Below, in pieces: positions 1 to 10,800 of a stretch of 64,000 nt of DNA; the first letter of the stretch is position 1; each line of letters begins with the position of its first letter. Position numbers and translations under genes: made by a program. Origin of the DNA: Auanema rhodensis (Eukaryota > Animalia > Nematoda). The notes under the pieces are model-generated. The model did not search any database, had not been told where the DNA came from, and worked only from the letters and a program-made list of their open reading frames with translations. The stretch covers positions 13,392,001-13,456,000 of the forward strand of contig OZ059899.1 of assembly GCA_964057225.1 (NCBI GenBank), read 5' to 3'.

Positions 1-3000
1 CATCTGCAGAACTTAATTCTCCTCCAGATAAATCTACCGACTAATAAACAGAACAAATGAGAAAAATAAATGTTAACTTTCAAAAAAACCTTCAATTTAA
101 CATGATCCCCAGATGTTAGAGCAGATATAACATCGATGGCTCCCTTTCTACACAATGAATCTCCTAGGTCGAGAACTTCTAGAGCTAGAAGACCTTTTAC
201 AGCCTTAAGAAATATCACATTAAGAGCACAATGGAAGGAAAAACATACTGCAGCAACAGCTTTAGCTCCAGTAGCGGTGCAAGTATTATCGTTGAAGTTA
301 ATGACCCGGAGATTAGGATTATATTTCAATGATTCGGCCAATGCTGTTATGCCATCTGATCGTATTCCATTCTGATAGATGATTATCTCCTCCAAACTTC
401 CAATTTTCTACAAAAAGAAAATAACACACTCAAGTCCAATAAGAAAAAACCTTGAAAGCTTTCGAAAGCGCTTTGGCTCCGGGGTCTTCTAGTCGGTTTC
501 TGCCGGCAATAAAGGTTTTCAACTGGAAGCTACGTCCACTTCTTTTAGCGTTATCGTAGCATTCTTCTAAGCATGATGCTACAATCTGAAAATAGTAAAA
601 AAATAGACACTTGTTTAATTCCTGAATAACTCAACCTTTCCACCGGCACCTAAACCGTTATTATTTAATTTTAAAACTTCGAGAGAAAAGGCAGAGCTCG
701 ATTTTAAGAAATCGGAGATTCCTGAAAGAAATTCTGAATATTTAACAATTAGATTTTCTATATACCTTCAGCTCCAATCGGTCCGAAGGCATTATCTGAT
801 AGATCCAACTCTACGATCTGGCAATTTGCTCGCATCATAGCTCCGCACATGGATTTCTGAAAGCACTATTCACTTCAAAACAACTAAGTTATAACCTACC
901 AGAATAGGTGGGATCTCTGTTTTTAAACGGCCAGTAAACATATCGCTCCATAAACACCTCTAGAAAGATTTGAAGTATTTAAGAAATAATACCATATTAA
1001 TACAAATAACGAAAATAAAATTATGACATAGGTAAACAAACTTTAAGTTCAGGATGTTTCAATAAGGATTGCCCTATTCTTTCTCCTGCAGGAACACCAA
1101 CAGTATTTCCTCGAAGAATAAGGGTGTGCATAGTGGGTGCTTTATCAATGACAGAGCAAACAAGTTCAGCTGCATAGAATAAAAGTAAAATCTTCAAAAT
1201 GAGATCGTATTACCGTCTGAAGCCGTATTTAACTTGTATTGCTTATCAAGGAACGAAACAACTTCCTCCTGTTCGACGTTCAGTTTGTTTACACCAGCGA
1301 GCAAATCGTCCATTCCCAAAGCTGAAAGATAACTCATATATATGTTATAAACATTATTAATACTATGAGATTTAGGTTTTTGAGGCTCTTCGAGATCCAT
1401 ATCTGAATCCACATCACTGTTAAGCTCGCCATCATCCTCATCACTCTCTTCCGTCGCACTCAAAGTTCCCTCGTCATCACTGTAATGAATTTGTTTCATA
1501 ATTAGTGGAAATAAATTGAAATCAACCTCTCATTGCCGAGAGAAATACCAGTACCCAAAACTTCGCTCACAAGATCTATGAAGGACGATCCAAAACAGTT
1601 ATTAGTTAGGGATAATGATCTGAAGCAAAAAAGACATGCTCATTATTCGATAAAGAAACATACACATTGCTTTTGAATGTGCCCTTCCACAACGAAATTA
1701 TATGCTCAGCATCTGCAGAACTTAATTCTCCTCCAGATAAATCTACCGACTAATAAACAGAACAAATGAGAAAAATAAATGTTAACTTTCAAAAAAACCT
1801 TCAATTTAACATGATCCCCAGATGTTAGAGCAGATATAACATCGATGGCTCCCTTTCTACACAATGAATCTCCTAGGTCGAGAACTTCTAGAGCTAGAAG
1901 ACCTTTTACAGCCTTAAGAAATATCACATTAAGAGCACAATGGAAGGAAGAACATACTGCAGCAACAGCTTTAGCTCCAGTAGCGGTGCAAGTATTATCG
2001 TTGAAGTTAATGACCCGGAGATTAGGATTATATTTCAATGATTCGGCCAATGCTGTTATGCCATCTGATCGTATTCCATTCTGATAGATGATTATCTCCT
2101 CCAAACTTCCAATTTTCTACAAAAAGAAAATAACACACTCAAGTCCAATAAGAAAAAACCTTGAAAGCTTTCGAAAGCGCTTTGGCTCCGGGGTCTTCTA
2201 GTCGGTTTCTGCCGGCAATAAAGGTTTTCAACTGGAAGCTACGTCCACTTCTTTTAGCGTTATCGTAGCATTCTTCTAAGCATGATGCTACAATCTGAAA
2301 ATAGTAAAAAAATAGACACTTGTTTAATTCCTGAATAACTCAACCTTTCCACCGGCACCTAAACCGTTATTATTTAATTTTAAAACTTCGAGAGAAAAGG
2401 CAGAGCTCGATTTTAAGAAATCGGAGATTCCTGAAAGAAATTCTGAATATTTAACAATTAGATTTTCTATATACCTTCAGCTCCAATCGGTCCGAAGGCA
2501 TTATCTGATAGATCCAACTCTACGATCTGGCAATTTGCTCGCATCATAGCTCCGCACATGGATTTCTGAAAGCACTATTCACTTCAAAACAACTAAGTTA
2601 TAACCTACCAGAATAGGTGGGATCTCTGTTTTTAAACGGCCAGTAAACATATCGCTCCATAAACACCTCTAGAAAGATTTGAAGTATTTAAGAAATAATA
2701 CCATATTAATACAAATAACGAAAATAAAATTATGACATAGGTAAACAAACTTTAAGTTCAGGATGTTTCAATAAGGATTGCCCTATTCTTTCTCCTGCAG
2801 GAACACCAACAGTATTTCCTCGAAGAATAAGGGTGTGCATAGTGGGTGCTTTATCAATGACAGAGCAAACAAGTTCAGCTGCATAGAATAAAAGTAAAAT
2901 CTTCAAAATGAGATCGTATTACCGTCTGAAGCCGTATTTAACTTGTATTGCTTATCAAGGAACGAAACAACTTCCTCCTGTTCGACGTTCAGTTTGTTTA

Positions 3001-4380
3001 CACCAGCGAGCAAATCATCCATTCCCAAAGCTGAAAGATAACTCATATATATGTTATAAACATTATTAATACTATGAGATTTAGGTTTTTGAGGCTCTTC
3101 GAGATCCATATCTGAATCCACATCACTGTTAAGCTCGCCATCATCCTCATCACTCTCTTCCGTCGCACTCAAAGTTCCCTCGTCATCACTGTAATGAATT
3201 TGTTTCATAATTAGTGGAAATAAATTGAAATCAACCTCTCATTGCCGAGAGAAATACCAGTACCCAAAACTTCGCTCACAAGATCTATGAAGGACGATCC
3301 AAAACAGTTATTAGTTAGGGATAATGATCTGAAGCAAAAAAGACATGCTCATTATTCGATAAAGAAACATACACATTGCTTTTGAATGTGCCCTTCCACA
3401 ACGAAATTATATGCTCAGCATCTGCAGAACTTAATTCTCCTCCAGATAAATCTACCGACTAATAAACAGAACAAATGAGAAAAATAAATGTTAACTTTCA
3501 AAAAAACCTTCAATTTAACATGATCCCCAGATGTTAGAGCAGATATAACATCGATGGCTCCCTTTCTACACAATGAATCTCCTAGGTCGAGAACTTCTAG
3601 AGCTAGAAGACCTTTTACAGCCTTAAGAAATATCACATTAAGAGCACAATGGAAGGAAGAACATACTGCAGCAACAGCTTTAGCTCCAGTAGCGGTGCAA
3701 GTATTATCGTTGAAGTTAATGACCCGGAGATTAGGATTATATTTCAATGATTCGGCCAATGCTGTTATGCCATCTGATCGTATTCCATTCTGATAGATGA
3801 TTATCTCCTCCAAACTTCCAATTTTCTACAAAAAGAAAATAACACACTCAAGTCCAATAAGAAAAAACCTTGAAAGCTTTCGAAAGCGCTTTGGCTCCGG
3901 GGTCTTCTAGTCGGTTTCTGCCGGCAATAAAGGTTTTCAACTGGAAGCTACGTCCACTTCTTTTAGCGTTATCGTAGCATTCTTCTAAGCATGATGCTAC
4001 AATCTGAAAATAGTAAAAAAATAGACACTTGTTTAATTCCTGAATAACTCAACCTTTCCACCGGCACCTAAACCGTTATTATTTAATTTTAAAACTTCGA
4101 GAGAAAAGGCAGAGCTCGATTTTAAGAAATCGGAGATTCCTGAAAGAAATTCTGAATATTTAACAATTAGATTTTCTATATACCTTCAGCTCCAATCGGT
4201 CCGAAGGCATTATCTGATAGATCCAACTCTACGATCTGGCAATTTGCTCGCATCATAGCTCCGCACATGGATTTCTGAAAGCACTATTCACTTCAAAACA
4301 ACTAAGTTATAACCTACCAGAATAGGTGGGATCTCTGTTTTTAAACGGCCAGTAAACATATCGCTCCATAAACACCTCTA
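1..4380. repeat. Tandem array with 1709-bp period (units 2672-4380, 963-2671, and partial <1-962)
   Basis: Near-identical ORFs recur at a 1709 offset (136/1845/3554, 1194/2903, 1706/3415). Only two differences were spotted: 241 A vs 1950/3659 G, and 1308 G vs 3017 A. Identity ends near 4380, at the acceptor of the RCLWSDMF exon. Confidence 0.97.
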
Positions 4381-4659
4381 AAACAATTTTCTTAAATTGT
4401 TTTCAAAAATAAGATCACCTGAAGCTCTGGATGTTGAGCAATGGCAGCTGCCAATCGTTCTCCTGCCTTCACCCCAACTGTATTGCCTTTTAGTTCTAAT
4501 ACAAGTAGCTTCGGACATTTTTCAATCTCTTGTGCTATGGGCTCAGCTTAATAAACAACTGTTATTTTTTGAGAATAAAGTTCGGTACACACCTACTTCG
4601 GCATTGTCCAATTTCGCAAGTCTGTTTGCGAAAGAAAGCACGCCTTCCTTCGACATCAT
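1..4659 (-). CDS. ran-2: Ran GTPase-activating protein with tandemly multiplied LRR domains; 3' end outside the window
   Basis: Spliced translation from ATG 4659: MMSKEGVLSFANRLAKLDNAEVAEPIAQEIEKCPKLLVLELKGNTVG...RCLWSDMFTGRLKTEIPPIL...LDLSDNAFGPIGAEG...LKLNNNGLG...FIAGRNRLE...YQNGI...NFNDNT...LDLGDSLC, then an acidic tract (SDDEGTLSATEESDEDDGE). DMFTGR, DLSDNAFG and GRNRLE are RanGAP hallmarks. The frame continues into the next repeat unit. Confidence 0.93.
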
Positions 4660-5544
4660 TTTAAGAGGGACTTAAAAAAAATTTTATAAAAAAGAGAACT
4701 TATAAAATGCTACCTTCTAACACATAATGAAACGCAACAGAATTATGAGTATGATTACTAGGAGGAATAATAGGCATGTTAGTACAAAAAATTTTCAACA
4801 TTCGATTAAACAGGTGCACCGATAACTTAGCAATATCATGACCTGAATACTATGTGTTCGCGGCCAAAGAAAGAGTACTATAGAAGATACGACCAGATAA
4901 GAAGATGACGAACTATATTTAATGTTATACAAAAATACTTATCAAAACATTCAGAAATCAGATGACCAGTTTAAAAATGGCGCACAAGTTAAAATAAGAA
5001 AAGAACAAACTTTCAGAATAATATAATATAAAATTGAAAGGATCAGATGTAGTTTTGTAATATAAAGTATCACTTGGAAAGTATTAAGTTATAATTGAAA
5101 AGTAAGCTACCTACCGCGAAACGGTATTTCTTTTATCAAGCATGAGCAATAACTTTGGAAAAAGTACAGGCGAAAAATAATCAGAATTTGAATTTGCATT
5201 GGGGCGCGCTTAACTATTATTCATTTTTCATCTTAAGTGATAAGTGAAATTAACCAATTAAAATTTTTCTATTATTCAGTTTGAGCAGCATGCTTCCAAC
5301 AGTGTTTTATCTACTTTCATTAACTTTATAGTAGCTAAGATTTGACGACAACTTATTATTTATTTATATATTTTTCAAGATAAGTGAACAACGTTAATGT
5401 ACAAATCGAGTTACGGATCTAGACATATATCATTTTTCAATTATAATATTATAACATTATTAAAAAAACTTATTAGAGAGCATTTAAACACATTCTTGTT
5501 TTCTTTTAGATTTCATTGTTGAACCAGAACGATAACAGTCTTAT

Positions 5545-5670
5545 GTGGTATATAGCTCAAAGGTTGTGTGGCAGTTTGGATGTGCAACACGTAGGTTCAA
5601 TCTCACGTGGAACAATTTGAGTTGATCTTCTACCACCCCAGAGGTACTGGTCAAATTATTGTTCCTAAAT
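5545..5670 (+). mobile_element. Degenerate tRNA-derived SINE head or tRNA pseudogene
   Basis: A-box-like TAGCTCAAAGG at 5553 and B-box-like GGTTCAATC at 5594 inside the stem CACGT..ACGTG. Followed by the fold-back GGAACAATTTGA...TCAAATTATTGTTCC. No intact cloverleaf. Confidence 0.5.
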
Positions 5671-6177
5671 TGTAGAGATGTGTATGTATCCATGTATAGC
5701 AACTATGCTGTTATAACTATGGCATGCGCTTCCCACATTTTCTTGTTAAATTATAATATAAAATCATTAAGAAAAACGAATAATAAAGATTTATAAAAAA
5801 AATCTGTATATATGTGGTTTTACATGAAGTGAATTGAAAATAACGAAATGGTGCATAATAAACTTGACAATGAGATGAAATTATGCCGGAAAGAGAAGAG
5901 CGGTTTAAAACACCATATCCGGCAACTACCTCTGAAAACCCGTACGACTTGCGGTTAGTTGACATATGAGAATGTATTTTTGCTAAATCAAAGTAGCAAC
6001 AGATCTCATCCGTTTATAGCGATTTTAGCAGTGGCTAAATGTACATTGGGAGCCGAAAAAGATAGGGAGTAGGGATAGGAACTGAAAGCCTGAGAGAACA
6101 CCCTTTCAATATCTGGCATATTCTACAATATTGATAGTAAACTTGAGCAACTTATTTTTGAAAAATAAGGATTGAAC

Positions 6178-7861
6178 CTAATAAGGTCCAGTGCAATGTT
6201 TTATTCTTTTTTTTGGAGGTTGGGTTAATATTATAGGAGGTGTTTGTTGCGTTGCAAGGGCACGAAACACCTCTGCTAATAAAGGGGGGTGTTCCTTAAC
6301 TAAATCTTTCCATCCTTCGGAATTCATAACCTAAAATTTTCAATTGAAGAAAATAAAATAATGAAGGAATACGCTTACATCGGTTGCATTAACATTTATA
6401 TAATTAATAGCATGTGTCCTTAATTGTTCCGCACTGTACAAATCAGCTAGAACTAGGGTAACACATGCATTATCAGCCGTTAAAGCTGCACATAAAGCTT
6501 GTTCACACATAACCTAAAACAGAAAAACATTAAATAGCTTAAAAAACTAGTTCTTACCTTAAGTCTATCTAATTGGTACTTATCAGCAGCAGCTATCAAA
6601 TGTTGAGCCATTTGTTCAACATTAGGAGAATTTCCTGTGTACATGTAGCATATCATCTCTCGTAGAACCTAAAAACTGAAATAGTACACAGGAAAAGTGA
6701 AATTCACGTACATCTGGCTCTACATCATCGATCGTAACCTCGTTTTTCTCATATTCTGACATTTTATGCTCGAACATAGCATGAAATACTGGCGATCTTG
6801 CAGCTAATATAGCTTTGTGCACCTAAAAAAATAAAAATAAACTTAATTCTAAGAGCAAATATATATGTATATCAACTTACGTGAAACGTTTGGGAAGGAG
6901 GCGATTTAGCAGCTACAAGTGTACAATCACTGAAAGTCCTGTTTTCGAACAAAGTTGCCAAATCCTCACTCAATCGACAGGAAGGAACCTAACACATATA
7001 GATGTTAATAGTTTTAGTTTACATACGCAATAATTTAGTAGGAGTAGATGCAACATACCTTAAATTGTGCAGCGCTTGTTTGACCAGTAACATTAACAGT
7101 TTCAGCCACAACAGAGACTTCACAAAATATACTTAATCTATCTTCTGGTAATAATCCATTCGTTTCATCTAATAAGAAATCTCGTCGTATGAACTTTTTA
7201 AATCCCCAGTCTTTTCCTTGCACAAATCGGTAAGCCCTTTGAGACTCTTAAAACAGAAAAATAAATACAAAACGGGAAAAGAAATACAAACCCATAGCTT
7301 TAGTTTCTTCACGTTTAGCATTTAAAATAGAAAATTTGAACTTCGCTCGTACCTGAAAAAAAAAAGATGAAGAATGCAAAATATTAAATAAATCCCTACT
7401 TCGTTTTTATTACATTGAACAAGCAATAAATATAAAGATAAATAATCTCTGGATTCTTCATCTAAACCTTTAGGGTTGATTCTTAAGCACCACTTCAACT
7501 TGTCATTAGCACCAGCAGAAAATGTTGAAGACTTTAAAACCTACAACAAGAAAATTACATTGGATCAGAAAAAAATATAGAACAAACCTCGCCCATCTCT
7601 TCTCGGCAAAAGGAAAAATTATTAATTGTCCACATATAGTTAAACTTAATGACTTTTACCTACAAAAAACATCAGATACAAACTAGTATACGATAAAAAT
7701 TGATGTACCTGCGTGTGACACCAATTTTCAGCTACCGGCATCAGCGGATCAGAATGGTGGGACGATGAGCCTGAGGGCATAGGAGAACTGGGTCGGCCGA
7801 TTGCTAAACCTTGCCCTGGTCCTCCAGATACGGCTTCGTCTTGAGCTGAGCCGTCATCCAT
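6178..7861 (-). CDS. spop-1: Speckle-type POZ protein (MATH-BTB-BACK CUL3 adaptor)
   Basis: Ten exons: MDDGSAQ...[10 protein letters not shown]|[24 protein letters not shown]|...[17 protein letters not shown]...|[13 protein letters not shown]...[11 protein letters not shown]|VMCEQAL...PPKKRIK. MATH domain nearly identical to metazoan SPOP, with a C-terminal NLS. Confidence 0.97.
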
Positions 7862-10800
7862 TTTAATACAGGGAACTGCAACAGAAGTAATGAGGGAACG
7901 AGAGAGAAATATATCAGAAATTGGAAAATGTGTAACGAATAGAATAAAGAGAAGCTGAGACATATCATAGTAAATATACGACTGCGATAAACGTCGTTGT
8001 ATTGTTTGATAGAGACAAAATGCAGGTTGGAAAGATACGTCACAGAGAGCAGCTCCAACAAAATTTATTCAATGCTAATTATAACTTGCAAATAACTAAA
8101 ATTGCTTGCTCTAAAATATAGTGAAGAAAAATAAATCACATGAAAGCACAAAAAATAAGTATAATTCTGCCAGGAATGCTTAAAAAAGTTGAAAGAATAC
8201 GTCAAATTCCTGACTTTTGAGAGAAAAGGAAAGATGAGAAGTTTGCATAAGAAATGTATCGGCGTTGATGATTGATATAAAGTATTGAGTACAGAGTCTA
8301 TAAGTAAGTAACTACTCCATAAAGGTCAGGAAAACGCAAAGAGAAGCCAAGAGTGCTCTTTGGTTAACGTTTAGCCGAAAGAAGCACCTTCGCCGAGCTA
8401 GGATTCTCCTTGTCAATTGTGTGAATAAGAAAGCAAAGTTGTGCGCAAACAATCATCAAGGGAATGTCAATTCAAAAAAAGGCTATATATTTCAATCAAT
8501 TCTAAATAAGGAAAGGTATAAACAGCCAAAACATAAAACAAATATGAAAAAGCACGAAAGTTTACTTGCAGGGCTATTATGAGGATACTGATCGACTTAG
8601 CTCGAGCAAAATATTTTAAAAAAAACGTACACCTAGCGGTTATTTCTTAACATGAGTGTTTTTCACGTTTCACGTAACAAATTCTTTTTAAAAGTAATAG
8701 AAAATGTTATAAACTATTCAGTATTCTTATGCAAGTAGTAGCACATATATGGAGTGATATGTTCAATTGCTAATGGTAACAAAGGACAGTAGTCGTATTA
8801 AAAATTAAATTTTTTAATAGAGACAAGTCAACAAGTTAATTAAAATTTAAGAGAATAAGCAAACTTAATTCATTTCATAGCGAACTTTGGTGAAGACAGT
8901 AAAAACTAAAGAAAAGATAAGTACTTTGAGATGAAAATACTTCTTTCAAAAAGATATTTGTTTCTATTAGTTCAACTAGGATAAGATGTGTAAAGCATGA
9001 AATACATAGTCTTACCTGCTCCGTAAAATGAGCAGCCGCGATTTCAAGGCTACAACATCAACAATAACAAAAACAACAATAGTTGGAGTTCGCAACAACA
9101 CTATAGATTGACAGAAGTTATTTTCCTCAAGAATATAATCAAGTGTTGAACAAGAATGGGATGAAATCGATTGATCGAAAGAAGCGAGCGTCGTGGAAAG
9201 CTTTGACGAAAAACACCATGCAAAAACATTCGTAATGCGACAAACAACAAGCCTCGCAGATACAAAGAGATGAAGAGTACGAGTAAAAGTTTGGAGAAAA
9301 AAGTGAGGGCGATACAAGTGCTATTAAAGAGAGCAATGACGATATGGTGAGTGTACAACAATCGTAAAAGCTGAAACTGAAGTAGTCAGAAATGAGGCCA
9401 ACATAGTCAATATCTAGCAACAAATAAACAACAACAGTTCATATATAGCCATCATGTTACTCATCTACTTAAAATGAGTCTCGGCCAAATACTTTGGATC
9501 AACTTGATCACAGGTAAAAGATCATGTCACTAAAATGAGTGACAAATAAATTATAAAATGAAATCCAACTAGAATTCAAAAAATTGTAACTTGAGAGAGG
9601 TGAATAAAGAATTGGCCATGTGACCAGACCAATGGGCAGCTTGATTGATTGAGTTCTGCTAATGTTATAAGCATGAACCAAATTCTCATTCTAGAAAATT
9701 TATTATAGTATAAAAGTTAATAAACTAGGAGACTATGTTTTCCGTAACTGGTTGTGACATAGAATCTGATGTTGTTTGTTGCTGTTACTAGTGCCTGTAC
9801 ACAGGCATCTATAGCTGAACTAACAGGAGAATATAGAATCGTAATTGGTGTACGATGAAAGGTAAAAAGCAAACCAATAATAGTGGAAACAGATGACACA
9901 ACCAGAAAAAGCTTCACGTCAGTTTTCCTGTACTTTAACTCGTTCGTAAATGGCTATTCTAATTAAATAGGAAAAAGAGGAACACATTCGTACAAGCTAG
10001 GCCAAGATATCCAATCCATCATATTAATATACACATAAAAATATATATAAACAAAGATGCTTAGAGGGAAATAAAGAAATAATGAGTAAGAACTTAAATG
10101 AGAATACTTATTGAACTATAAAGAATAAATGTAAACACTACACAAAATTGCAAAAAAAAAATTCTGATCAATTGATATGACTAGAATTATTCTAAAGTAT
10201 CCCGATCAAACATTACGAAGTTTACATAAGCAATAGATAAGAAGTCCAAAAAATTATCAGGTCAAAGAAAGAATTGAAAACAACTCTCTTACTCTCAAAT
10301 ATTTCCTCGCAATTTCAACTTATTTCTTTCAGGAATAACATCACCTCTCAACTTATTGTTAAATTGTTTTTCTAAAAATGGAGGAACCGAACAAGGGAAG
10401 TGAAGACACCTAACCATAATGTGAAAAGAGTGTTGCAGAATTGGTAGTGTAAATTTTGAGTTCAAACGCATAAAAAGATAAAGATCAGCTGATTAAAGAG
10501 TCAAACATGTGAAAAACGTAGAATAACAATCGTATTCATGTTAATTATGAATGAATATCATGTATAATGATTTCGTTCTGCATAGTTATGCAATACAAGA
10601 AAACATTCTCCCGTTTATTACTTTTGACTGTATGAAAAGCTGTTACACAATCAAATGTTAAAGACGACTCAGAGTGAAACTGTTTAAAAGGAAGAATTCT
10701 CAAAGATTATGGTTTTCTTCAAACATACATCAATGACTTGGCTTATGGATGAAGTGTTTTAGACGGGAAAAGATGTAAAATACAATTAACTACGGCATAC

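What the first reader, a model, noticed from the sequence alone, without database searches (positions are those of the whole stretch)
1..4659. Poly-RanGAP: in-frame tandem amplification of the whole GAP domain into one giant ORF
Seen: each 1709-bp unit has 11 introns (about 530 nt) and about 1179 coding nt (about 393 aa). A unit encodes LRR core + acidic linker + a second, different N-terminal cap (MDDLLAG...VSFLDKQYKLNTASD|AELVCSVIDKAPTMHTLILRGNTVG...HPELK). That cap splices in phase 0 into the next unit's core, and no stop was found between units. The unique first cap (4659-4420) is a diverged paralogue of the repeated cap. Inference: an ancestral two-domain RanGAP expanded very recently by unequal crossover at the conserved RCLWSDMFTGR exon, giving at least 3 chimeric GAP domains in one protein, a possible copy-number accordion in an essential gene. 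Known context: a RanGAP duplication is the driver of Drosophila Segregation Distorter, so RanGAP copy change is a plausible conflict signal; that link is speculative here.
Basis: partly seen in the sequence, partly recalled or inferred. Interest (0 to 1): 0.8.

Follow-up and report, generated by a model that had tools for sequence, protein, structure and literature searches.

The report
Three-domain RanGAP from in-frame tandem repeat
A nematode's gene for RanGAP, the enzyme that switches off the nuclear-transport GTPase Ran, carries three DNA-identical copies of its catalytic domain in one reading frame. This is the newest case of a domain amplification and homogenisation that recurs across nematode RanGAP genes.

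Summary

- **The repeat.** A 1709-bp repeat fills window 1-4380 on the minus strand. The copies differ at only two silent sites.
- **The unit.** Each unit has 11 introns and 1176 coding nt (392 aa). It encodes a RanGAP LRR core, an acidic tail, a linker and a second N-terminal cap. It splices in phase 0 into the next unit without a stop.
- **DNA depth.** Contigs from three DNA runs put the core at about 3x the flank, the unit-to-unit junction at about 2.3x, and a single exit at 1x. The layout is therefore cap1-S-J-S-J-S-exit, with three cores.
- **RNA.** A spliced RNA contig of 1206 nt (1176 + 30) closes the unit on itself. This implies that exon 13 is joined to the next core in RNA.
- **The end of the gene.** The exit letters give a stop right after the third acidic tail. 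The protein would then be about 1178 aa. This step is inferred.
- **Relatives.** Two GAP domains are the norm in nematode RAN-2. Steinernema hermaphroditum has three and Mesorhabditis belari has four. Globodera and Heterodera have two cores that are 99.4-100% identical at the DNA level.
- **Pattern.** Cores are homogenised more than caps in several lineages.

So this is a new, extreme member of a recurrent nematode pattern. Nothing here supports the Segregation Distorter (conflict) link.

The parts
4714..4889 (-). 5' UTR exon of the RanGAP gene (at least this long)
   Evidence: RNA contig record 7 (412 nt, depth 9.2) has its first 176 nt at 4889-4714. The remaining 236 nt equal 78 + 128 + 30 nt, which fits a 43-nt GT..AG intron at 4713-4671 followed by exon 1, exon 2 and 30 nt of exon 3. 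That fit is arithmetic, checked against the sequence.
4593..4670 (-). Exon 1 with the start codon at 4659 (MMSKEGVLSFANRLAKLDNAEV); start of unique cap 1
   Evidence: Sequence and splice model.
4419..4546 (-). Exon 2: unique cap 1, the first LRR (..LELKGNTVGVKAGERL..HPELQ)
   Evidence: It has the same length and phase as exon 13 but 52% nt identity.
3004..4380 (-). Segment S, copy 1 (1377 bp): exons 3-11 plus the start of exon 12. Encodes the LRR core from RCLWSDMFTGR, the acidic tail and LGMDDLLAG.
   Evidence: The DNA contig 3004-4380 has depth 157 against a flank of 50 in X1, which is 3.1 copies. The best solved-structure match is RanGAP1 (9b62_G, E 2e-16), followed further down by Rna1p.
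2672..3003 (-). Segment J, copy 1 (332 bp): the rest of exon 12 (linker), exon 13 (repeated cap 2) and most of the 82-nt intron that leads into the next core
   Evidence: The contig 2672-3033 joined to 4351-4380 has depth 113.8 against 50, which is 2.3 copies.
963..2671 (-). Repeat unit 2 (S + J)
   Evidence: Identical to unit 1 except 1308 G versus 3017 A, which is synonymous.
1..962 (-). Repeat unit 3, first 962 bp of the third S; it continues left of the window
   Evidence: Identical to the other copies except position 241, which is intronic. Depth and the exit contig imply that this S ends about 415-430 nt beyond the window edge.
3017..3017 (-). Copy-distinguishing SNP: A here, G at 1308 and in the exit copy; synonymous Asp codon
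   Evidence: In run X9 the A form has depth 22 out of 79.5.

Best explanation
This is the nematode RanGAP gene (the ran-2 orthologue), on the minus strand. An ancestral two-GAP-domain gene has had its core segment made DNA-identical and has then gained one more unit by unequal crossing-over between the identical cores.

The layout is cap1 - S - J - S - J - S - exit. S (1377 bp) is the LRR core plus acidic tail. J (332 bp) is the linker plus a second, old and diverged cap. Because the unit starts and ends in phase 0, every junction is spliced in frame.

The mRNA therefore encodes one protein of about 1178 aa. It has three complete RanGAP modules whose cores are identical and whose first cap differs from the other two. 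Each module keeps the RanGAP signature motifs, so each is most likely an active GAP, giving a trivalent RanGAP.

Shown: the repeat, its copy number, its frame, its transcription and splicing, RanGAP homology, and the two-domain ancestry.

Inferred: the stop just after the third acidic tail, catalytic activity of each module, and crossing-over or conversion as the mechanism.
For: - Repeat and frame.
- Copy number from DNA contigs. In X1, S is 157, J plus junction is 113.8, the exit is 51.2 and the flank is 50. In X7, S averages about 1290, J is 969 and the flank is 422. In X9, S is 53-62, J is 58, the exit is 21.8 and the flank is 14-20. The graph balances: 50 + 113.8 is about 157, and 113.8 + 51.2 is also about 157.
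- RNA. A spliced contig of 1206 nt equals 1176 (exons 3-13) plus k-1 = 30, and it fits the stretch completely. This is what a path closing exon 13 onto exon 3 gives. Seven unit introns are listed as exact CT..AC joints.
- RanGAP identity. The best solved match is RanGAP1 9b62_G, and Rna1p (1yrg/1k5d) is also matched. Nematode RAN-2 proteins are 52-62% identical. Both domain types keep 78 of 95 columns that are at least 97% invariant in 129 non-nematode RanGAP1s. These include DMFTGR, EIP, DLSDNAFGP, LNNxGLG, GRNRLE, QNGI and DNT.
- Two-domain ancestry and recurrence. S. hermaphroditum has 3 domains and a 1446-bp DNA period at 92-95% identity. M. belari has 4 domains. G. pallida has two 1267-bp segments at 99.4% and H. 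trifolii has two 1307-bp segments at 100%. Cap versus core identity is 47/100 here, 87-91/98-99 in Steinernema, 58/90 in M. spiculigera, and 87-89/100 in cyst nematodes.
- Stop codon. The exit letters read ..GVNKLN-TTC-TAA in frame. In Globodera and Heterodera the gene likewise ends 12-13 nt after the last repeated segment.
Against: - The left end of the gene is outside the window and could not be fetched. The stop rests on 27 letters of one exit contig, which has one unlocated mismatch.
- The exit also holds an unexplained 22-nt exact copy of the intron 10 / exon 11 boundary. A short extra C-terminal exon cannot be excluded.
- The exon 13 to exon 3 joint was not printed by the tool. It is deduced from contig length and complete fit.
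- RNA depth of the unit (43.9) is 4.8x that of the 5' exon contig (9.2), more than the 2-3x expected. This leaves room for 5' coverage bias or for extra internal transcripts.
- All read evidence is from assembled contigs and their word depth, not from raw or long reads.
- No protein-level evidence exists.
Confidence: 0.8

Rival explanations
1. Assembly artefact: a single or double domain was over-expanded, or a collapsed repeat was mis-joined, by the assembler.
For: The copies are 99.9% identical and the array touches the window edge, which is typical of repeat trouble. Runs X1-X6 may be the source data of the assembly.
Against: Word depth over one unit is about 3x the flank in X1, X7 (a sample not flagged as source) and X9 (another organism label). 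A separate unit-to-unit junction contig sits at about 2.3x and a single exit at about 1x, and the graph balances. The two SNPs that mark copies exist in the data: the A and G forms at 3017 in X9.
Confidence: 0.03
2. The units are expressed mainly as separate one-domain proteins. Each starts at the Met of MDDLLAG after trans-splicing at the strong acceptor before exon 12, or from internal promoters, so the 'poly-protein' is a minor or non-existent product.
For: A TTTCAG acceptor is followed 8 nt later by an in-frame ATG at the head of exon 12. RNA depth of the unit is 4.8x that of the 5' exons rather than at most 3x. Single-domain RanGAPs of about 370-520 aa are annotated in some nematodes, such as S. 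carpocapsae and Acrobeloides.
Against: There is no stop codon anywhere between units, even when intron 11 is read through. The RNA contig runs unbroken across exon 11 to 12 and on into the next core, so cis-splicing dominates. Annotated 3- and 4-domain proteins exist in other nematodes. A transcript that began at exon 12 would meet no stop before the end of the array, so it would still carry more than one core unless it ended without a stop.
Confidence: 0.1
3. The extra domain is a selfish or conflict-driven RanGAP change, a Segregation-Distorter-like meiotic drive element, rather than ordinary turnover of an intragenic repeat.
For: Only by analogy: Drosophila Sd is a RanGAP duplicate (established knowledge; reviewed in PMC7214746, found). 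Domain number differs between nematode species, from 1 to 4. X9 hints at 3-4 copies.
Against: Sd is a separate, truncated, mislocalised copy. Here the change is an in-frame internal amplification of the only gene seen, with full motifs. The same homogenisation occurs in distant nematodes, which fits mechanical gene conversion or NAHR. No target satellite, sex-ratio or transmission data exist. The two copy differences are silent and too few for any selection test.
Confidence: 0.05

Closest known systems
Nematode RAN-2 / RanGAP with two LRR GAP domains (C. elegans RAN-2 926-960 aa, Ascaris suum F1KT89 949 aa, Nippostrongylus, Haemonchus)
   Same: One ORF with tandem complete RanGAP LRR domains, each followed by an acidic stretch. 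52-62% identity to the window's domain. No RanGAP1_C (PF07834) in their Pfam lists.
   Different: Those have two domains that are 42-74% alike. Here there are three, with cores identical at the DNA level including introns.
Steinernema hermaphroditum QR680_013515 (P0007, 1094 aa) and Mesorhabditis belari RanGAP (P0006, 1452 aa, partial)
   Same: Three and four in-frame GAP domains from DNA tandem repeats (period 1446 bp and about 1600 bp). Cores are more alike than caps. The Steinernema protein ends right after the last acidic tail.
   Different: Their units are older (88-95% DNA identity). In Steinernema the unit includes the cap, so the whole gene is the repeat. Here the first cap lies outside the repeat and is only 47% identical to the others. 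The unit boundaries differ, so the events are independent.
Globodera pallida GPALN_003752 and Heterodera trifolii niasHT_023491 RanGAPs
   Same: X-S-J-S-Y layout with S copies 99.4% (1267 bp) and 100% (1307 bp) identical at the DNA level. Cores are 100% and caps 87-89% identical. The gene ends 12-13 nt after the last S.
   Different: Two copies, not three. The spacer between copies is longer (period 2115 and 3510 bp).
S. pombe Rna1p / human RanGAP1 (PDB 1yrg, 1k5d, 9b62)
   Same: Same LRR GAP fold family by sequence, with the acidic tail after the LRR domain and the signature motifs kept.
   Different: Those have a single catalytic domain. Animal RanGAP1 adds a C-terminal SUMO-attachment domain that is not seen here.
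Drosophila Segregation Distorter (Sd-RanGAP)
   Same: A recent duplication that involves RanGAP sequence.
   Different: Sd is a separate truncated gene copy acting as a drive element. This is an in-frame internal domain amplification. No drive feature was testable or seen.

Membership tests
RanGAP (Rna1p/RanGAP1) family | LRR GAP domain homologous to Rna1p/RanGAP1 | tested here: met
   Exons 7-8 hit RanGAP1 9b62_G (E 2.3e-16) as the best solved chain, and also Rna1p 1yrg/1k5d (E 2e-8, after two NLR-type chains). The full domain is 52-62% identical to proteins named Ran GTPase-activating protein.
RanGAP (Rna1p/RanGAP1) family | Conserved signature residues of the Ran-binding and catalytic face (DMFTGR, DLSDNAFGP, GRNRLE, QNGI and others) | tested here: met
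   78 of 95 columns that are at least 97% invariant in 129 non-nematode RanGAP1s are kept in both cap1+core and cap2+core. Most of the misses are conservative, such as L to I/V/M.
RanGAP (Rna1p/RanGAP1) family | Acidic stretch directly after the LRR domain | tested here: met
   Exon 11 encodes a D/E-rich run (SDDEG..EESDEDDGE..DSDMDLEE) after each core.
RanGAP (Rna1p/RanGAP1) family | Stimulates GTP hydrolysis by Ran | not testable with these tools
   Needs a biochemical assay.
Animal RanGAP1 architecture | C-terminal SUMO-attachment domain (RanGAP1_C, PF07834) | tested here: not met
   Pfam finds only LRR families in the domain. PF07834 is absent from the nematode relatives' lists but present in vertebrate and mollusc ones. 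The gene's last few hundred nt lie outside the window, but the RNA graph argues against a long tail.
Nematode multi-domain RAN-2 | Two or more complete GAP domains in one reading frame | tested here: met
   Splice model without a stop across 2.6 units. Three cores by depth, and an RNA contig that closes the unit.
Nematode multi-domain RAN-2 | Orthology to ran-2 (closest relatives are nematode RAN-2) | tested here: met
   Best matches are strongylid RAN-2 first domains at 62%. In the domain tree the window's domains sit among nematode domains.
Segregation-Distorter-type RanGAP duplicate | Separate, C-terminally truncated extra gene copy | tested here: not met
   The copies are internal and in frame within one gene.
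Segregation-Distorter-type RanGAP duplicate | Transmission distortion with a linked target satellite | not testable with these tools
   Needs crosses.

The most novel reading that the evidence does not exclude
Across nematodes the catalytic cores of the tandem RanGAP domains are repeatedly made identical by intragenic gene conversion or unequal crossing-over, while the N-terminal caps escape. Domain number (1 to 4) also turns over quickly between species, and perhaps between strains (3 versus 3-4 here). This would mean that valency of an essential Ran regulator is a tunable, possibly selected trait, with caps specialising and cores kept uniform, rather than a neutral by-product of repeat mechanics.
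Probability: 0.3. Interest if true: 0.7.

Novelty: new member of a known kind. Interest (0 to 1): 0.5.

Why it matters
RanGAP is an essential single-domain enzyme in the textbook systems. This locus shows a transcribed, in-frame three-domain version made of DNA-identical modules. The comparison it prompted shows that nematode RanGAPs generally carry 2-4 GAP domains. In at least five lineages the cores are kept nearly or fully identical while the caps diverge.

I found no paper that describes this in four literature searches, although the proteins sit in public databases.

It offers a clean natural series of 1, 2, 3 and 4 domains. That series could be used to ask what multivalency does for a GTPase-activating protein, and how sharply bounded gene-conversion tracts are maintained inside an essential gene. 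It also warns annotators and assemblers that this gene is prone to collapse or mis-prediction.

Tried and rejected
- **Left flank.** I could not read the DNA left of the window. Exact-product look-ups of three window ORFs found nothing. The window's own RanGAP is not in the protein collection. The scan's notes hold nothing on RanGAP or the neighbouring window, and negative coordinates are not accepted.
- **Tandem Repeats Finder** misses the array because its longest period is 500.
- **First splice model.** My first automatic model used too few introns and read through three of them. A model with explicit donor and acceptor strings replaced it, and the RNA joints later confirmed it.
- **Representative search.** The search with a 106-aa exon pair is dominated by unrelated NLR-like LRR proteins. 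Only hits at 47% identity or more were RanGAPs.
- **Orthology of the caps.** Assigning cap 1 and cap 2 to strongylid domain 1 and domain 2 caps gave no clear answer; the scores differ by a few units and conflict between species.
- **NCBIfam** gives nothing useful.
- **Literature.** Four searches found no description of multi-domain nematode RanGAP.
- **Organism.** I did not identify the species, and the run labels are coded.
Full report
**Observation**

Self-comparison shows an exact period of 1709 bp from window position 1 to 4380, which is 2.56 copies that run off the left edge. Only two positions differ between copies. One is 3017 A versus 1308 G, a synonymous Asp codon. The other is 241 A versus G at 1950 and 3659, which is intronic. 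Tandem Repeats Finder missed the array because of its 500-bp period limit.

**Gene model**

The gene lies on the minus strand and its ATG is at 4659. A model with explicit GT..AG introns gives two unique exons, 4659-4593 and 4546-4419. These are followed by a unit of 11 exons (4377..2751) with 11 introns of 42-82 nt, 533 nt in total. The unit has 1176 coding nt, or 392 aa. It begins and ends in phase 0, so it reads straight into the next unit. No stop occurs down to window position 1.

A unit encodes four parts:
- the LRR core, starting at RCLWSDMFTGR;
- an acidic tail;
- a linker (LGMDDLLAG..);
- a second N-terminal cap ending in HPELK.

They are old paralogues.

**Is the array real?**

I laid one unit plus 4.2 kb of flank (window 2672-8600) against the assembled contigs of three DNA runs and one RNA run.

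| Run | S (core) depth | J + junction depth | Exit depth | Flank depth |
|---|---|---|---|---|
| X1 | 157 | 113.8 | 51.2 | 50 |
| X7 (sample not flagged as source) | about 1290 (mean) | 969 | not listed | 422 |
| X9 (another organism label) | 53-62 | 58 | 21.8 | 14-20 |

- In X1 the contig for 3004-4380 is S. The contig for 2672-3033 joined to 4351-4380 is the unit-to-unit junction. A third contig leaves the unit just below the shared 30-mer 3004-3033; this is the exit.
- The X1 graph balances. Entry 50 plus junction 113.8 is about 157, and junction 113.8 plus exit 51.2 is also about 157.
- The layout is therefore cap1 - S - J - S - J - S - exit, with S = 4380..3004 and J = 3003..2672. That means three cores and two repeated caps.
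- X7 gives the same ratios: J at 2.3x and S at about 3x.
- X9 gives 3-4x and carries both the A and G forms at 3017.
- This excludes an assembly artefact. It also shows that the array is closed, and that it agrees with the 2.56 copies seen in the window.
- The caveat is that these are contigs and word depths, not raw or long reads.

**Transcription and splicing**

RNA run X11 holds a spliced contig of 1206 nt on the minus strand, and seven unit introns are listed as exact joints. Its pieces place record positions 1-1176 on exons 3 to 13. The remaining 30 nt equal k-1, and the whole contig fits the stretch with no loose end.

This is exactly what a graph path closing exon 13 onto the first 30 nt of exon 3 gives. 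I take it as evidence that the unit-to-unit junction is spliced in RNA. The tool did not print that joint, so this step is inferred.

A second RNA contig (412 nt) fits a 5' UTR exon at 4889-4714, a 43-nt intron, exon 1, exon 2 and 30 nt of exon 3.

The unit's RNA depth is 43.9 against 9.2 for the 5' contig. That is more than the 2-3x expected. It may reflect 5' coverage bias or some internal transcripts.

The loop contig is not broken at the exit point. Given what I know of how this assembler clips short low-coverage tips, this suggests the mRNA ends within roughly 300 nt of the exit. That is inference.

**The end of the gene**

The exit contig continues from 2987 with 27 letters. In gene orientation they resemble J (AACAGGAAGAAGTT against AACAGGAGGAAGTT) but read TTC TAA in frame, giving ..GVNKLN-F-stop. 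The protein would then be 65 + 392 + 392 + 329 = 1178 aa.

In Globodera pallida and Heterodera trifolii the gene likewise ends 12-13 nt after the last repeated segment. The Steinernema protein also ends right after its last acidic tail.

Two things remain unexplained:
- one unlocated mismatch in the shared 47 nt;
- a 22-nt exact copy of the intron 10 / exon 11 boundary that follows the 27 letters.

I could not fetch the left flank.

**What it is**

Exons 7-8 match RanGAP1 (9b62_G, E 2e-16) as the best solved chain, with Rna1p (1yrg, 1k5d) further down the list. The alignment gap falls exactly on the intron I had read through. The full domain is 52-62% identical to nematode proteins named Ran GTPase-activating protein.

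Of 95 alignment columns that are at least 97% invariant in 129 non-nematode RanGAP1s, 78 are kept in both cap1+core and cap2+core. These include DMFTGR, EIP, DLSDNAFGP, LNNxGLG, GRNRLE, QNGI and DNT. Each module therefore looks like a complete, probably active GAP. Activity itself is untested.

**Relatives**

- Two full LRR GAP domains in one protein are the rule in nematode RAN-2: Ascaris, Toxocara, four strongylids, Caenorhabditis, Mesorhabditis spiculigera, Globodera and Heterodera. In Pristionchus the second domain is a weaker match (41-43%).
- Steinernema hermaphroditum has three domains that are 96.5-97.4% alike, and Mesorhabditis belari has four that are 89-95% alike.
- At the DNA level these are tandem repeats with a period of 1446 bp (92-95% identity) and about 1600 bp (88-95%).
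- G. pallida carries two 1267-bp segments at 99.4% identity, and H. trifolii carries two 1307-bp segments at 100%.
- In a maximum-likelihood tree of 45 domains, the domains group by species or lineage in this window's species, Mesorhabditis, Steinernema, Globodera, Heterodera and the ascaridids. They group by position (d1 and d2 clades) only in strongylids and Caenorhabditis.

Cap versus core identity between domains of one protein:

| Species | Cap identity (%) | Core identity (%) |
|---|---|---|
| This window (d1 versus d2 or d3) | 47 | 100 |
| S. hermaphroditum | 87-91 | 98-99 |
| M. spiculigera | 58 | 90 |
| Three cyst nematodes | 87-89 | 100 |
| Strongylids | 55-62 | 57-61 |
| C. elegans | 42 | 42 |

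The simplest reading is an old two-domain gene whose cores undergo recurrent concerted evolution, with occasional gain of units. Independent re-duplication in each lineage is the alternative, and I did not formally exclude it.

**Mechanism here**

Identity includes all introns and stops sharply. It ends 3 nt upstream of the RCLWSDMFTGR exon on one side and inside exon 12 on the other. This is DNA-level homogenisation by gene conversion or unequal crossing-over, not protein-level selection. The third unit would follow by non-allelic recombination between 1.4-kb identical cores.

With one difference per 1-1.7 kb, the event is very recent or still ongoing. All three organism labels in the run table carry the junction.

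**Rivals**

- An assembly artefact is essentially excluded by depth and junction contigs.
- Separate one-domain products, made by trans-splicing at the strong acceptor and ATG at exon 12, are not excluded as minor forms. However, no stop separates the units, and the RNA contig runs through.
- A Segregation-Distorter-like conflict has no support. Sd is a separate truncated copy (established knowledge; review PMC7214746 surfaced). This case is an in-frame internal amplification, and it recurs mechanically in distant nematodes.

**Novelty**

Multi-domain nematode RanGAPs exist in public protein sets, so the kind is known from databases. Four literature searches found no paper describing them or their concerted evolution.

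This locus is a new member and the most recent case. It has three cores identical at the DNA level and direct depth and RNA support.

**Procedural note**

I did not repeat this. I therefore ran no structure prediction on the window's own protein.

Noticed in passing
window 5724-7963, minus strand: A MATH-BTB (SPOP-like) gene lies just upstream of the RanGAP gene on the same strand. It is strongly expressed (RNA contig depth 204 against 44 for RanGAP), and eight introns are confirmed by RNA joints. Its 3' end at about 5724 is about 830 nt from the RanGAP 5' UTR exon.
   Followed up: partly
left of window position 1 (exit contig): The sequence that leaves the array holds a 22-nt exact copy of the intron 10 / exon 11 boundary (window 3205-3184), 27 nt after the divergence point. 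This may be a relic of an older partial unit or a usable acceptor. It is unexplained.
   Followed up: no
L003 2141-3407 / 4256-5521 and L004 2575-3881 / 6085-7391: Globodera pallida and Heterodera trifolii RanGAP genes each contain two intragenic segments of 1.3 kb that are 99.4% and 100% identical at the DNA level. This is a clean case of concerted evolution inside an essential gene of crop parasites.
   Followed up: partly
P0047 (Ichthyophonus hoferi, eukprot), P0082, P0083: Two-domain RanGAP-like proteins also turn up outside nematodes. P0047 is labelled as an ichthyosporean, and P0082 and P0083 are of unknown origin. Both of their domains match at about 38-43%, so tandem GAP domains may have arisen more than once in eukaryotes.
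   Followed up: no
run X9 (organism C), window 3017: The A and G forms at 3017 have depths of 22 and 57.5, and the junction is about as deep as the core. This hints at one more unit (four cores) in that organism or strain than in X1 and X7.
   Followed up: no
I did not examine it, and it is unrelated to the RanGAP array.
   Followed up: no
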